From assembly GCA_904063045.1 (NCBI GenBank), contig CAJFCJ010000003.1:2342504-2406503 (forward strand): a stretch of 64,000 nucleotides of DNA, given 5' to 3'. This DNA comes from Dimorphilus gyrociliatus (lineage: Eukaryota; Animalia; Annelida). Below, in pieces: positions 54,244 through 58,764 of the stretch (positions are counted from its first letter, which is position 1; every line of letters begins with the position of its first letter). The position numbers and the translations under genes are program-made. The notes under the pieces are model-generated. The model ran no database searches. It had not been told where the DNA came from and saw only the letters and a program-made list of their open reading frames with translations.

Positions 54244-55181
54244 ATGGCCAACAACGGGGCTACAGCAAAAATTCCAGTTAAAAAACAAACACTGGAAGAT
54301 GCCTACTCTCCTCCAGCTAATTTCCTAGAAATAGATGTTATTGACCCTCAAACCCATGGCGTTGGCAAAAAAAGATATACGGATTATGAAGTTAGAATGA
54401 AAGTGGGTGTTTCCTATTAATTTCATCAATTTTGAACATATTTATCAATCTTCAAACTATTTTTATTTGATATATTATGCTTTTGATGTAACGTTATAAT
54501 GTCAAAATGATTAAATTAAATGTTTGTGAAGCTGAGAATGGATGATAATGACTCATCAAATTTTTTCAGACTAATTTGCCGGTGTTTAAAGTAAAAGAAT
54601 CGAGCGTTAGAAGGAGATATAGTGACTTTGATTGGTTAAAAGTCGAACTTGAAAGAGATAGCAAGGTTTGTTTGGTGGCTTTTTCATAAAAAATAACAAT
54701 TCTTATTTAAAAAAAAGTTCTTATTTTACACTTAATAAACAAAAAACAATAAAATAATAGATTGTTGTCCCGCCACTCCCACCGAAAGCTTGGTCAAGGC
54801 AACTTCCTTTCCGAGGAGATGATGGCATTTTTGAAGATGAATTCATCGATGAACGTCGTAGGGGACTAGAAACATTTATCAACAAGTAAATATATGTTAT
54901 ACATATAAACTTTTTACTTTCGATCGAATTACTCTGATAAATTAGGTTTTCAACATAAATAATGATGAGTAGTTAACATTCAACCTATATACCAATTAAA
55001 CTCATTTACTTTATTTATAAACACCTAAGTATGTTTACAGATTTTTATAGTTTTTTCTTTTGTTATCCTTTATAGAGTTGCTGGCCATCCATTAGCGCAG
55101 AACGAAAGATGCCTTCACATGTTCTTGCAGGAACCAGTTATTGATAAAAACTACATTCCTGGAAAAGTTCGACTAACTTAA
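54244..55181 (+). CDS. SNX3: Sorting nexin 3 (PX-only, 4 exons)
   Basis: AYSPPANFLEIDV, RYTDYEVRMK|TNLPVFKVKESSVRRRYSDFDWL, |IVVPPLP, FIDERRRGLETFINK|VAGHPLAQNERCLHMFLQ; stop TAA at 55179-55181. Confidence 0.97.
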
Positions 55182-55529
55182 GGAATGAAGAAATTTAACG
55201 AAACGTTAAAAAAATACTAAAACAAAAAAAAATTAAAAAAGAAAGAAAAGCGTCAAGAAAATCCCCTGTTATCGGCAGTGTTGTAATTCTTTTTAGCCGA
55301 AATTCAGCGCTTATGTATAGGTAAATATTTGTGCTTTATAATAATGTCATTGAGAATCAAGTAATAGAATTATGCGTTTCTCTATAACGCTTTTTTTGCG
55401 ATTTTCAATAAAATACTCGCAATATTTCATAATTTTTCTCTTTTTTTCATCCTGATGTTATATTTTAAGGCATTAAAAGTTTAAAATATTTACAAAAAAA
55501 AAGACAATGAGTTATTATTGCATGAATAT

Positions 55530-58500
55530 TTAAAGAGATAAATTTTGTTCTTTTATTCTTATCCAACCAAGATAATTTTTATCTGCTTCATTGTAAATTT
55601 CTATTAAAGATGGAAAGAGACCAACAAGAATTTTTAACCCTGGAAGTATAGCGTTTGCAAAGAGTTCAATATGATTATTTATAAGATCTTTCTCCCGGTA
55701 TAATTTATCATATCTTCCATTAGCAGCTTTAAATAATTCATCTTCTTTATTCATCTCGGATTCTAGAAGATCACAAGCGATTCTATGCTCCTCCCAAGGT
55801 AAACAACAATAGTAAAGATTTGATAAACTTGATATTAAACTTATAATACGTTCCTTCCAAGTTGTATTTTCTATATTCATTTCTTCAAGGTTTGCTAAAG
55901 CTGCTATATCATTTACAACTCCTACCAAATTATTTTGTCTTGTTGATAAAATACATAGTCTTATCGTCTTCAATACTTCTTCATAATCAGTTTCATTAAG
56001 GTCATAGAAGATGTTTATTTCTGAATTTTGCAGTAACAAGTAGGTTATTTTTAGATGATGTTGTTCTATTATTGAGCATTTGTAGATTAAAGACATGGGA
56101 TCATTCGTTGATTTTAGATAATCGTTGTTGACGCCTCTGTGATCGATATGAAGGCATAGACACGCAATGAAGATCGCTTTAACTTGAATAATAGGTAATT
56201 TAACATCGCCTCTAATCTTTTTCAAAATGGTATAAACAAAATGAGCAGTTCGGCAAGCATTCTTCCAATTATGAAATGGTACAGGCCTATAAGATTTTTT
56301 AGCTGACAGTATAAATCCAACTAATTTGTTTAGTTGAAAGCCGTTTGGTCCTAGAAATTGAATAAAAATTGATTATTATATATAATTAACATAAAAATCT
56401 GTAAAAAAAAATATAGAATCTTTCATTTATTCTTATCTCGTTTTTAACGTAAACCTGCTAGCTGTTGGCACATGTAGATAATAAGTTGGGGTAGTATGTT
56501 CTCGCAGTCATGAAAAGTAAACGAATGATTATCTATATTATCGGGTATTTTGACAGGATTAAGGATGGCTTTACTTTTAATAGCTGCTTGAATATCCTCA
56601 CCGCACCACATGTGATGCGAAAGTACATCCTCACAAATTTTTGTAGTATAAGCGTTCATTTTCAATTTGTCTACTAGTTTGGAGTAGTTAATAATCAATT
56701 TTAAATGAGCCTCAATTGACTGTATAGTCTCAATGTCATTAGAAGTAAAACCGCCTTCAAAGTTCCTTTTATTTATTAACTCTATAACAGCTACAACCTT
56801 GTCATTTTCCTTTTTCAAAAAACAATAAAACCATATCTATATTTGTTTGTCATCTGATAAAGTTTATAAATACAAAATGTTTGCTAGTTAATCTAAATGA
56901 TAATTTGTTTATGTATAAGCTATGAAAATATTAGTATCCCTTTGAATAGTCATAGTTAAAGCGCAACGAAATAAGATGATTTTTTTTATACAATTCTAAA
57001 AGAAAATCTGATCAAGGAAGAGAAATTTTTCCGATTAACCATGCAATTACCTTGATTGGAAAAGCCAGGATATTTCTTGTAAAATGCCCGTCAATTTTCT
57101 CATCGAATCTACTATCGCGAAGGACGTTGTTGATTCTAACAAGTTCACACTTTCGAGCAACGTAACCGGCTATACCTTCTTCTAAAGAAAATTCGATTCT
57201 TTTATCATTAGAGATGGATGATATCACTCTATCTTCTTCTTCGACTTGATATATGATGGATTTCTCAGCCCCTATTAATTTATCAGTGATAAATGTCTCT
57301 ACATATTCAGGTAGAAGAGGTAAATCAAAGGTATCAGTGAAAGAGTTGTAATGAAAGTTTAGTAAGTAATTATTTAATTGATTTTGCTTTTCGGAAGAGA
57401 AATTTGCCTGAAGATAAAGAAATATGATATTTATCTTTGCACTGATATAAGTATATATAAAAGAAAAGGAAAAGAGTTAAAGAATGTCATCTAACATGAA
57501 GTCGATTAAGTAAAATACCAAACCAGGCTGAAACAGTGATAACCAATCGTAAGTGCCACTGTGAGAACGGATTCTTATCAGAATTCTTCTGAAACTGTAT
57601 AATATCTGTCAAAAAGGGAAACAATTTACAAACGAGCATATTGAATTTAATATAAAGCCGATTAATACACAAAATATCGCCTTTAGGAAGACATATTGGT
57701 GCAGCTATGACAGATTGTTTAAACAAAGAATTCATGCATGGAATATTCTCTGGGAATCTTTCATCTAGAGCAACATCCTTAGAAAATATTACTTCTTGAT
57801 TTATTGCAGAATAAGCTGCAACCGTTGAGTTTTTTTTTATCTCTCCGTAAGGTATAAATGACCATTTTCTATGGGATTGAAAAGAGTGAATTACTATGTA
57901 GATCGTATCTACATTTCTGGAAGAGAGAAAATGATAATAAAAATTTAATAAGTGTAAACTTTGTTTTCTTGTTGAATGTATATGAATACAGATCTTTATC
58001 CTAGAGAAGAAACAAGAGAGATAACCTATATATTAATATATAAATAAGCTACTAACGCCAGAATACCCAAGAATTATTAAATCAAACTGATCAGCGTTTA
58101 TACCTGTTAATTAATGATTATCTAAGAAAATTATTAAATTGCTAATCAAAAGAAATACGAACAAGTCGATAGTAAAGAAGTCATGTGATACGTGTGCCTA
58201 TGTAAATTACGCCTGGTCTCCAATTCATTATCAGCGTCCCTAAGAAGTTTTTTCTGTACTTGCTTTATTTTCTTTTCCTTGAACTTAAAACGAAAGAAAA
58301 ACACTGTGATTTTACATCTAAGACAAATACAACAAAACATACAATATCATCACATAAATCATCGTCTAATTCATCTTTCAACACTAACTTCTTTTTTCTT
58401 ATTAACCAGTTTTTTATTACCTCTAAAGGTATACAATCAATAACATACTGCTCCAACATTTTCGGATTCATTTCCATAAAGTTTCTCATGCTAACAGCAT

Positions 58501-58764
58501 CTTCATCTACGAAAATATAACAGATAGATTGAAATGAATTACAGAGTAAGATGAATATGTCATCAAGTTGGGAAATGTTGGTATTAGAATAAAGGAACAA
58601 AGTAAGAAATGGATTATAAATATGTTAAAAATGTACATAAGAAATGTGTACTTACCATAACGAAATCTTTGCTCTTTGCTATGTTTTTTATCGACATATG
58701 TCAATTTATGACCGGGCAACGGATTTTTCTGGACAGTTGATAGTTGACGGCTTGCATCCACCAT
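55530..58764 (-). CDS. PDE10-like GAF-GAF-PDEase protein with a degenerate active site (probable pseudo-phosphodiesterase)
   Basis: PDE10-type N-terminus (FMEMNPKMLEQYVIDCIPLEVIKNWLIRK), GAF-A (STVAAYSA...DERFP...SVIAAPI), GAF-B (FSLEEGIAGYVAR...TRNILAFPI...LINK...FTSNDIE), catalytic exon with YRPVPFHNWKNA and IACLCLHIDHRG. Confidence 0.85.

What the first reader, a model, noticed from the sequence alone, without database searches (positions are those of the whole stretch)
55530..56351. Pseudo-phosphodiesterase: PDE10-like protein lacking every metal ligand
Compared with class I PDE motifs: HNxxH is HNWKN (56259-56273); the HD pair in CHDLDH is CLHIDH (56139-56156); ATDL is STRQ; the DL Asp (ACDL) is SNL; EF is EM; and the invariant substrate Gln is His (NNHIELF). 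The ORF is nonetheless intact across many exons, and GAF-B keeps the NK..F..D.E motif. This points to a catalytically dead paralog kept as a cyclic-nucleotide sensor, scaffold or dominant-negative dimer partner of an active PDE10 (inference). I know of no well-characterised metazoan pseudo-PDE of this kind.
Basis: partly seen in the sequence, partly recalled or inferred. Interest (0 to 1): 0.75.

Follow-up and report, generated by a model that had tools for sequence, protein, structure and literature searches.

The report
Catalytically dead PDE10-type phosphodiesterase, conserved
A small marine worm (Dimorphilus gyrociliatus) and a related species both keep an intact, transcribed PDE10-type phosphodiesterase gene whose four metal-binding catalytic residues are all replaced, so it is very probably a naturally occurring "dead enzyme" kept for a non-catalytic job.

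Summary
Observation confirmed. The window is Dimorphilus gyrociliatus (annelid) and the gene is DgyrCDS2483.

**Dead catalytic site.** The last exon (56350-55530, minus strand) is a full PDEase_I domain, closest to PDE10A. The model has pLDDT 92.8 and TM 0.90 to human PDE10A. The four direct metal ligands read N, L, H, R. In 80 homologous catalytic domains they are H, H, D (80 of 80) and D (79 of 80).

**Conserved in a second species.** A syntenic ortholog in an unidentified relative has N, L, H, E. Both genes keep about 790-codon ORFs over 10 exons with canonical splice sites. They are 58% identical, dN is 0.28 and dS is saturated, so this is not a decaying pseudogene.

**Family placement.** Trees place the pair in the PDE10A-like clade (99/99) on a very long stem.

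- GAF-B keeps its fold, but the PDE10A cAMP-pocket residues I could name are deleted or replaced in both species. The "sensor" idea is therefore weakened.
- "Paralog" is unverified. I could not show an intact PDE10A-like gene in this genome.
- RNA contigs prove transcription and splicing of 7 introns. They also show retention of the last intron and of a 43-nt mini-intron, and skipping of exon 8. No productive exon 8-exon 9 junction was seen.

This scan has not reported this gene before. Two other notes concern different PDE10-type genes of the same genome.

The parts
58656..58764 (-). Exon 1, with the ATG at 58764-58762
   Evidence: ORF list. RNA contig junction 58656/58506 with GT..AG on the minus strand.
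58343..58506 (-). Exon 2, the N-terminal helical segment that aligns with the N-terminus of PDE10 proteins
   Evidence: RNA junctions. Alignment with PDE10 N-termini.
58163..58283 (-). Exon 3. The public model DgyrCDS2483 uses an internal donor here and skips exons 4-5.
   Evidence: RNA junctions 58343/58283 and 58163/58103. P0001 sequence.
58057..58103 (-). Exon 4 (start of GAF-A), absent from the public protein model
   Evidence: RNA contig junctions. Same 47-nt exon in the ortholog.
57960..58000 (-). Exon 5a (41 nt)
   Evidence: Frame analysis. The ortholog has a 41-nt exon at the same place.
57917..57959 (-). Inferred 43-nt mini-intron (GTTTAC...CCAG). Its removal is needed to keep the frame. 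It is not spliced in the RNA contig.
   Evidence: A 38-nt GT..AG segment at the homologous place restores the frame in the ortholog. PDE10 homology runs in frame on both sides.
57669..57916 (-). Exon 5b (core of GAF-A)
   Evidence: The N-terminal half matches GAF-A of PDE10A-like proteins, E 9e-18. Alignment.
57496..57605 (-). Exon 6 (end of GAF-A and the connecting helix)
   Evidence: RNA junctions 57669/57605 and 57496/57407.
57051..57407 (-). Exon 7 (first half of GAF-B, carrying the 21-residue deletion relative to PDE10)
   Evidence: Pfam GAF_2. PDB 2ZMF at 1.2e-14. Alignment.
56455..56809 (-). Exon 8 (second half of GAF-B with NK..F..D.E, the linker, and the start of the catalytic domain). 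One RNA form skips it, which shifts the frame.
   Evidence: RNA junctions 57051/56809 and 57051/56350. Translation of the skipped form stops after 6 codons.
56351..56454 (-). Intron 8 (104 nt, GTTTAC..TAG). It is retained in the RNA contig that covers exon 8.
   Evidence: Contig record 3 runs unbroken over 56323-56808. Donor and acceptor checked.
55530..56350 (-). Exon 9, the whole PDEase_I-like domain in one exon, with the stop at 55532-55530
   Evidence: AF2 pLDDT 92.8 and TM 0.90 to human PDE10A.
56259..56273 (-). HNWKN in place of HNWKH. The metal ligand H529 is N (codon 56261-56259).
56139..56156 (-). CLHIDH in place of CHDLDH. H563 is L and D564 is H.
55935..55946 (-). STRQ in place of ATDL. 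The metal ligand D674 is R (it is E in the ortholog).
55659..55679 (-). NNHIELF. The invariant purine-binding Gln is H here (Q in the ortholog), and the clamp Phe position is L.
55799..55889 (+). A 91-nt GT..AG intron of a plus-strand (antisense) transcript inside the last coding exon. It is probably in the 3' UTR of the convergent SNX3-like gene.
   Evidence: Joint 55794/55886 with 'GT..AG cut +4' and contig depth 344 against about 50. Splice-site check and SNX3-like exons at 54244 to about 55178 on the plus strand.

Best explanation
This is a lineage-restricted pseudoenzyme derived from a PDE10A-type, GAF-regulated cyclic-nucleotide phosphodiesterase.

Shown:
- The gene encodes about 790 residues with the full PDE10 layout: N-terminal helix, GAF-A, GAF-B, linker and a PDEase_I fold.
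- All four direct ligands of the Zn/Mg centre are replaced. Three of the four replacements are shared with a deeply diverged syntenic ortholog.
- Both species keep the ORF and all splice sites under purifying selection.
- The gene is transcribed and spliced.

Inferred:
- Without H529, H563, D564 and D674 the binuclear metal centre cannot form, so the protein does not hydrolyse cAMP or cGMP.
- The cAMP pocket of GAF-B and the substrate pocket of the catalytic domain are both remodelled, while the folds and the helices that connect the domains are kept. The most likely role is therefore a non-catalytic structural or regulatory subunit that acts through protein-protein contacts. It would probably be a dimer, like other GAF-PDEs.
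- A high-affinity cyclic-nucleotide sensor is less likely.
- Retention of the last intron and of a 43-nt mini-intron, and skipping of exon 8, suggest that output of full-length protein is limited or regulated at the splicing step.
For: - Identity: DgyrCDS2483 of Dimorphilus gyrociliatus.
- Domain and fold: PDEase_I 7e-33; PDE10A is the best PDB match at 2e-36. The AF2 model has pLDDT 92.8 and pTM 0.90, and Foldseek's top 50 are all PDE10A at TM 0.90 and rmsd 1.8.
- Ligand columns: N/L/H/R here and N/L/H/E in the ortholog, against H/H/D in 80 of 80 and D in 79 of 80 homologs.
- A single-ligand mutant (D674A) of PDE10A2 loses Zn1 and was crystallised with cAMP bound (PMC12103293).
- Ortholog: same gene order (TPR protein, PDE, SNX3-like, LIG3). 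Ten exons of nearly identical lengths, all GT..AG, a 785-aa ORF and 58% identity.
- Selection: dN 0.28, dS 0.9 to 4 (saturated). Catalytic exon alone: dN 0.29, dS 1.15-2.07. Neighbouring genes give dN 0.30 (TPR) and 0.09 (LIG3). The chance of no stop in 273 random codons of this base composition is 1e-10.
- Full-length collinear match to PDE10A-like P0009, E 5e-90.
- Tree: inside the PDE10A-like clade at 99/99, with a stem of 2.0 substitutions per site against tips of 0.43-0.45. AU tests disfavour placement with pde-5-like proteins (p 0.033) or outside the PDE10 group (p 0.035).
- RNA: seven introns spliced with minus-strand GT..AG, and intron 7 has zero depth.
- GAF-B: passes the Pfam GAF cut-offs, and its model matches 2ZMF at TM 0.70-0.74.
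Against: - No contig of the only RNA data set shows the productive exon 8-exon 9 junction or the spliced mini-intron. The forms seen (intron-8 retention, exon-8 skipping, mini-intron retention) all truncate the protein. Contigs show presence, not absence, so this does not exclude the productive form.
- There is no protein-level evidence.
- Loss of activity is inferred from residues and has not been measured.
- Only two species are available and dS is saturated, so omega is only bounded (at most about 0.1-0.27).
- The proposed scaffold or dimer role has no direct evidence.
- D674 (R against E) and Q726 (H against Q) differ between the two species, so the pocket may simply be unconstrained.
Confidence: 0.72

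Rival explanations
1. It is a cyclic-nucleotide sensor or buffer. The dead protein would still bind cAMP or cGMP, in GAF-B or in the former active site, and pass on or sequester the signal.
For: - The GAF-B fold is kept, and the GIAG loop, T364 and the NK..F..D.E motif are kept in both species.
- H525, H567, E592 and H595 are kept.
- The PDE10A2 D674A mutant still binds cAMP.
- The ortholog keeps Q726.
Against: - The residues I could name for the cyclic-nucleotide site of PDE10A GAF-B (from a docking paper, PMC6151459, plus my recollection of PDB 2ZMF for F304) are lost in both species. F304 and D305 are deleted with a 21-residue loop, N353 is D and Q383 is E. These four positions are conserved in 13-15 of 15 PDE10-type proteins compared.
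- In the catalytic pocket the MMDR loop, the QGD motif and the F729 position are changed, and Q726 is H in D. gyrociliatus.
Confidence: 0.15
2. It is a dominant-negative or regulatory heterodimer partner of an active PDE10-type enzyme of the same animal.
For: - Engineered catalytically dead PDEs displace active ones and act as dominant negatives (PMC13095499).
- The GAF-A and GAF-B domains and the connecting helices, where GAF-PDEs dimerise, are retained.
- Unchecked notes of this scan report other PDE10-type genes in the genome.
Against: - There is no evidence of an interaction.
- The protein is only about 25% identical to PDE10A-like proteins over its full length, so a shared dimer interface is doubtful.
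- I could not verify an intact PDE10A-like partner.
Confidence: 0.13
3. The main product is a GAF-only protein. Transcripts that retain intron 8 stop three codons after exon 8, so the gene would mostly make an N-terminal GAF-A/GAF-B protein, and the PDE-like exon would be translated rarely.
For: - The contig that covers exon 8 runs straight through intron 8 (depth 41.7).
- No exon 8-exon 9 joint is listed.
- Intron 7 has zero depth, so this is not general pre-mRNA or DNA carry-over.
Against: - Exon 9 is an open 273-codon frame in both species, with dN 0.29 against dS 1.15-2.07, and the exon 8 donor and exon 9 acceptor are in matching phase in both.
- Contigs drop minority paths.
- An antisense transcript overlaps at least part of exon 9 (its intron lies at 55799-55889) and confuses the depth there.
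Confidence: 0.1
4. It is a transcribed pseudogene in decay.
For: - A very long stem branch of 2.0 substitutions per site.
- Loss of every direct catalytic ligand.
- Non-productive RNA forms.
Against: - Intact ORFs of 790 and 785 codons, and 9 canonical introns, in two species whose synonymous sites are saturated.
- P(no stop by chance) is 1e-10 for exon 9 alone and 2e-29 for the whole CDS.
- dN equals that of the neighbouring TPR gene.
Confidence: 0.04
5. It is still a hydrolase that uses an unconventional site, for example H564, D566, H567, E592 and H595.
For: Five second-shell or acid residues are conserved in both species, and the CLCLHIDHRGV stretch is identical between them.
Against: - The H, H and D ligands are invariant in 80 of 80 homologs, and the fourth ligand (D674) is D in 79 of 80.
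- A single D674A change already removes Zn1.
- Position 674 is R in one species and E in the other.
Confidence: 0.04

Closest known systems
Vertebrate PDE10A and invertebrate 'PDE10A-like' enzymes (for example human PDE10A2, PDB 2OUP and 5SDU; GAF-B 2ZMF)
   Same: Same domain order (N-terminal helix, GAF-A, GAF-B, PDEase_I). It is the best sequence and fold match for both the catalytic domain (2e-36; TM 0.90) and GAF-B (1.2e-14; TM 0.70-0.74). It lies inside the PDE10A-like clade at 99/99.
   Different: - All four direct metal ligands are replaced.
- The ACDL Asp, the MMDR loop, the QGD motif and the clamp Phe position are changed.
- In GAF-B a 21-residue loop carrying F304 and D305 is deleted, N353 is D and Q383 is E.
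- It is about 25% identical over the full length, against 38-49% among PDE10A-like proteins of different phyla.
- The whole catalytic domain is in one exon.
Engineered catalytically dead PDEs (PDE10A2 D674A and D564N crystallographic mutants; dominant-negative PDE4 and PDE2 constructs)
   Same: Loss of a metal-ligand Asp abolishes the Zn site while the fold and substrate binding remain. Such proteins act by displacing active enzyme (PMC12103293; PMC13095499).
   Different: Those are single laboratory mutations. Here four ligands and much of the pocket have been replaced naturally and kept across species, so substrate binding itself is doubtful.
Degenerate EAL, GGDEF and HD-GYP domain proteins of bacteria that act as c-di-GMP receptors or scaffolds (own knowledge, for example FimX and LapD; a c-di-AMP 'pseudo-phosphodiesterase' is named in PMC13700151)
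   Same: The same evolutionary logic: a nucleotide phosphodiesterase domain that has lost catalysis and is retained as a regulator.
   Different: A different fold family, different ligands and a different kingdom. There is no homology with the EAL or GGDEF families, and no evidence here that the ligand is still bound.
Invertebrate 'pde-5'-type PDE10 relatives (for example Ostrea edulis XP_048759916)
   Same: They belong to the same PDE10 superclade with tandem GAF domains. One pocket residue can vary naturally: the Ostrea protein has Glu at the invariant Gln.
   Different: They keep all metal ligands. The AU test disfavours grouping the worm protein with them (p 0.033).

Membership tests
Class I cyclic-nucleotide phosphodiesterase (Pfam PDEase_I, HD-domain superfamily) | Sequence and fold of the all-helical PDEase_I catalytic domain | tested here: met
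   114.7 bits against a cut-off of 24.8, over profile positions 1-236 of 238. AF2 pLDDT 92.8 and TM 0.90 to PDE10A.
Class I cyclic-nucleotide phosphodiesterase (Pfam PDEase_I, HD-domain superfamily) | H...HD...D metal-binding signature (H529, H563, D564, D674 in PDE10A2 numbering) | tested here: not met
   N, L, H, R here and N, L, H, E in the ortholog. The homologs are 80/80, 80/80, 80/80 and 79/80 canonical.
Class I cyclic-nucleotide phosphodiesterase (Pfam PDEase_I, HD-domain superfamily) | Invariant purine-recognising Gln with a hydrophobic clamp | tested here: not met
   H here and Q in the ortholog, against Q in 78 of 80. In the 17-sequence full-length alignment the F729 position, which is F in all 15 PDE10-type proteins, is L in both species.
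Class I cyclic-nucleotide phosphodiesterase (Pfam PDEase_I, HD-domain superfamily) | Hydrolysis of cAMP or cGMP | not testable with these tools
   Needs an enzyme assay.
PDE10 family (PDE10A-like clade) | Tandem GAF-A and GAF-B N-terminal to the catalytic domain | tested here: met
   GAF and GAF_2 are above cut-off for GAF-B. GAF-A matches PDE10A-like GAF-A at E 9e-18, and the full length matches at E 5e-90. Alignments.
PDE10 family (PDE10A-like clade) | Phylogenetic placement with PDE10A and PDE10A-like proteins | tested here: met
   The clade has 99/99 support. AU tests give p 0.033 for placement with pde-5-like proteins and p 0.035 for placement outside PDE10. Nested versus sister position is unresolved (p 0.107). 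The branch is long, so caution is needed.
PDE10 family (PDE10A-like clade) | cAMP-binding pocket residues of GAF-B (C287, F304, D305, N353, T364, Q383). The residue list comes from a docking paper plus my recollection of PDB 2ZMF for F304 and T364. | tested here: not met
   F304 and D305 are deleted, N353 is D and Q383 is E in both species. T364 and the GIAG loop are kept.
Pseudoenzyme (inactive homolog kept by selection) | Catalytic residues lost while the fold is retained | tested here: met
Pseudoenzyme (inactive homolog kept by selection) | ORF under purifying selection in more than one species | tested here: met
   A syntenic ortholog with a 785-codon ORF. dN is 0.28 against saturated dS. 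P(no stop by chance) is 1e-10 to 2e-29.
Pseudoenzyme (inactive homolog kept by selection) | Expression of a productive full-length mRNA and protein | tested here: inconclusive
   The gene is transcribed and 7 introns are spliced. Intron 8 and the mini-intron are retained, exon 8 is skipped in one form, and no exon 8-exon 9 joint appears in the contigs. No proteomics is available.
Decaying (unitary) pseudogene | Stops, frameshifts or broken splice sites | tested here: not met
   There are none in either species once the canonical GT..AG introns are removed.

The most novel reading that the evidence does not exclude
This is the first natural pseudo-phosphodiesterase of the class I (PDE1-11) family in animals. 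It would be a PDE10A-derived, catalytically dead GAF protein, kept since before the split of two deeply diverged dinophilid-type annelids. It could be the only PDE10A-like gene left in this compact genome. It would work as a regulatory or inhibitory subunit of cyclic-nucleotide signalling complexes, with its dosage set by regulated intron retention and exon skipping.
Probability: 0.15. Interest if true: 0.75.

Novelty: new variant of a known kind. Interest (0 to 1): 0.55.

Why it matters
Pseudoenzymes are known for kinases, phosphatases, proteases and bacterial cyclic-dinucleotide phosphodiesterases. The class I cyclic-nucleotide PDEs are major drug targets, and I found no natural dead member described in the literature held here.

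A conserved natural example gives three things:
- It shows which parts of the PDE10 scaffold are kept when catalysis is lost: the fold, H525, H567, E592, H595 and the CLCLHIDHRG stretch.
- It offers a natural counterpart to the engineered dominant-negative PDEs used in cell biology.
- It shows that a genome noted for shrinking its gene families still keeps such a gene (1.63 genes per orthogroup, PMC7854359).

The limits are that it is known in only two small annelids and its function is unknown.

Tried and rejected
- **Word search with the exon alone.** It returned nothing because the length window excludes full-length proteins.
- **Looking for an intact PDE10A-like protein of D. gyrociliatus.** All of these failed:
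  - Searches with P0004 and with a spiralian PDE10A-like profile were flooded by vertebrate PDE10A, and no Dimorphilus entry appeared in the 120 rows shown.
  - I picked AT-rich-looking hits by amino-acid composition and classified them. The three looked up (P0047, P0030, P0106) came from other assemblies.
  - The findings search by sequence was blank.
  - So 'paralog' versus 'sole PDE10A-like ortholog' stays open.
- **Naming the relative species.** The SRR accessions occur in no paper held. The P0004 sample gave no DNA.
- **Precise dN/dS.** dS is saturated for this gene and its neighbours, so only an upper bound on omega is given. YN00 failed numerically.
- **Assembly or sequencing error.** I rejected this as the cause of the substitutions. 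An independent species shares them, and the RNA contigs match the window without a single difference.
- **Grouping with P0004 and the Uloborus protein in the tree.** I do not trust it, because the tool itself flagged long-branch attraction.
- **Reads.** Read laying and the look-up of sequencing runs each allow one call, so the mini-intron and the exon 8-exon 9 junction could not be examined in raw reads.
Full report
**What is there.** The minus strand of 55530-56351 is one open exon of 273 codons. It matches Pfam PDEase_I end to end (7.3e-33, profile 1-236 of 238). Its best solved relatives are PDE10A catalytic domains (2e-36), ahead of PDE2A (2e-30) and PDE5A (6e-25). An exact look-up identifies the gene as DgyrCDS2483 (CAD5113306.1) of the miniature annelid Dimorphilus gyrociliatus. 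Its genome is compact, with a median intron of 66 bp and small gene families (PMC7854359).

I aligned the exon with 80 homologous catalytic domains from an exhaustive HMMER search. In human PDE10A2 numbering:
- H529, H563 and D564 are invariant (80 of 80) and D674 is present in 79 of 80. The worm protein has N, L, H and R.
- The ACDL Asp is N, the EF Phe is M and the purine-binding Gln is H.
- Not everything in the site is lost. The acid His of HNWKH and D566, H567, E592 and H595 are kept.
- Outside the metal centre, the MMDR loop, the QGD motif and the clamp Phe position are also changed.
- The PDE10A2 D674A single mutant already lacks Zn1 and was crystallised with cAMP bound (PMC12103293). 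Loss of all four ligands therefore makes hydrolysis very unlikely. This is an inference, not a measurement.
- The fold is intact. The AlphaFold model has pLDDT 92.8 and pTM 0.90, and the 50 best Foldseek matches are all PDE10A (TM 0.90, rmsd 1.8 Å).

**Gene model.** Contigs of one public run (X1) match the window without a difference. They skip seven introns with GT..AG on the minus strand, so X1 holds RNA and the gene is transcribed and spliced.
- These joints give exons 58764-58656, 58506-58343, 58283-58163, 58103-58057, 58000-57669, 57605-57496, 57407-57051, 56809-56455 and 56350-55530.
- The public protein model (662 aa) skips the 47-nt and 332-nt exons and so lacks most of GAF-A.
- With the RNA exons the frame is continuous only if a 43-nt GT..AG segment (57959-57917) is also removed. 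That gives 790 residues.
- This 790-residue protein aligns from end to end with PDE10A-like proteins (E 5e-90; the N-terminal half alone gives 9e-18 against GAF-A).
- GAF-B passes the Pfam GAF cut-offs. Its best PDB match is the cAMP-bound GAF-B of PDE10A (2ZMF, 1.2e-14), and its model has TM 0.70-0.74 to 2ZMF.

**A conserved ortholog.** In the exhaustive search only one protein is close, a 178-aa ORF fragment at 53% identity. Every other hit is 34% identical or less over the full domain.
- The fragment's contigs come from four sequencing samples of an unidentified relative. They carry the same gene order: TPR protein, this gene, an SNX3-like gene and DNA ligase III.
- I built the ortholog's gene: ten exons of almost the same lengths (91, 167, 121, 47, 41, 251, 110, 357, 355 and 818 nt), all with GT..AG, giving a 785-codon ORF that is 58% identical.
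- It also needs a mini-intron (38 nt) at the homologous place. This is the main reason to accept the mini-intron as real.
- Its ligand columns read N, L, H, E. Three replacements therefore predate the split, and the fourth position is non-canonical in both species. It keeps Q at the Gln position.
- The two species are deeply diverged. The LIG3 core is 84-86% identical, the TPR protein is 56% identical, and dS is saturated in all three genes.
- For this gene dN is 0.28 against dS of 0.9 to 4 depending on the method. For the catalytic exon alone dN is 0.29 and dS is 1.15-2.07. That is the same dN as the TPR neighbour.
- A random frame of this base composition would stay open over 273 codons with probability 1e-10. 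A decaying pseudogene is therefore very unlikely.

**Family placement.** A maximum-likelihood tree with a site-heterogeneous model puts the two worm proteins inside the clade that holds vertebrate PDE10A and the 'PDE10A-like' proteins of echinoderms, molluscs, nemerteans, a spider and a tardigrade (99/99). They are apart from the invertebrate 'pde-5' type, PDE2 and the group I labelled PDE5/11 from tree position only.
- The stem is 2.0 substitutions per site, against 0.43-0.45 on the two tips. A burst of change was followed by slower evolution.
- AU tests disfavour placement with the pde-5 type (p 0.033) or outside the PDE10 group (p 0.035). They cannot tell nested from sister position (p 0.107).
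- The branch is long, so these values deserve caution.

**What it probably does.**
- These residues are C287, D305, N353 and Q383 from PMC6151459, plus F304 and T364 from my own recollection of 2ZMF.
- Both species lack a 21-residue loop that carries F304 and D305, and have D at 353 and E at 383.
- The 15 other PDE10-type proteins compared are nearly invariant at these positions.

The catalytic pocket is remodelled too, and two of its positions differ between the two species. I therefore think nucleotide binding is less likely than a structural or regulatory role through protein contacts. The protein would probably be a dimer, as in other GAF-PDEs. This step is inference. Engineered dead PDEs do act as dominant negatives (PMC13095499), but nothing here shows a partner.

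**Open points.**
1. Productive mRNA is not confirmed.
   - In X1 the contig that covers exon 8 runs through intron 8.
   - Another joint links exon 7 directly to exon 9, which shifts the frame and stops after six codons.
   - The mini-intron is unspliced, and no exon 8-exon 9 joint is listed.
   - Intron 7 has zero depth, so this is not general contamination.
   - Contigs drop minority paths. An antisense transcript with its own GT..AG intron at 55799-55889 overlaps the last exon; it is probably the 3' UTR of the SNX3-like gene.
   - The productive form may be a minority or stage-specific. This needs reads or cDNA.
2. I could not verify that an intact PDE10A-like gene exists in this genome.
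   - Two unchecked notes of this scan describe other PDE10-type genes on other pieces of the genome: s1-080252, and s1-083645 with Glu at the invariant Gln.
   - The Ostrea 'pde-5' protein has the same Glu. At least one of those genes may therefore be of the pde-5 type.
   - The gene studied here could then be the only PDE10A-like gene left.

**Novelty.** Searches of the paper library for pseudo-phosphodiesterase, pseudoenzyme with PDE terms, and variants found only a bacterial c-di-AMP case and engineered mutants. I rate this a new variant of a known kind: a PDE10-family member turned pseudoenzyme. It is of moderate interest because it is conserved and well documented at the sequence level, but it is restricted to a small lineage and has no known function.

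Noticed in passing
window 58283-57669 (minus strand): The public protein model DgyrCDS2483 (662 aa) uses an internal donor in exon 3 and skips a 47-nt and a 332-nt exon that the RNA contig includes. It therefore lacks most of GAF-A. The RNA-guided model has 790 residues.
   Followed up: yes
window 57917-57959; L001 7999-8036: Very short inferred introns (43 nt and 38 nt, both GT..AG) lie at the same place in the two species. Each is needed to keep the frame. The 43-nt one is unspliced in the RNA contig.
   Followed up: partly
window 55400-55889 (plus strand): A much deeper contig (depth 344 against about 50) and a plus-strand GT..AG joint (55799-55889) lie inside the last coding exon. The convergent SNX3-like gene (CDS 54244 to about 55178, plus strand) seems to have a spliced 3' UTR that overlaps this gene antisense.
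   Followed up: partly
This is either a long 5' UTR or an assembly merge of neighbouring transcripts.
   Followed up: no
P0094 (Uloborus diversus PDE10A-like, XP_054724597.1): This is the only other of the 80 catalytic domains with a changed metal ligand (D674 is S), and it also sits on a long branch. It may be a second, independent degenerate PDE10A-like protein.
   Followed up: no
P0025 and its 14 listed isoforms (Ostrea edulis 'pde-5'); P0053: The invariant purine-binding Gln is Glu (LPHLEVGF) in all 15 Ostrea isoforms checked. The same change is reported by another note of this scan (s1-083645) for a different PDE10-like gene of D. gyrociliatus.
   Followed up: partly
P0003 (2922 aa): One database protein matches the query in three separate stretches. 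It is either a triple PDE-domain protein or a fused annotation of a tandem array.
   Followed up: no
one search hit list: Among the named spiralian PDE10A-like proteins in the top rows, all are molluscs or nemerteans and none is an annelid.
   Followed up: no
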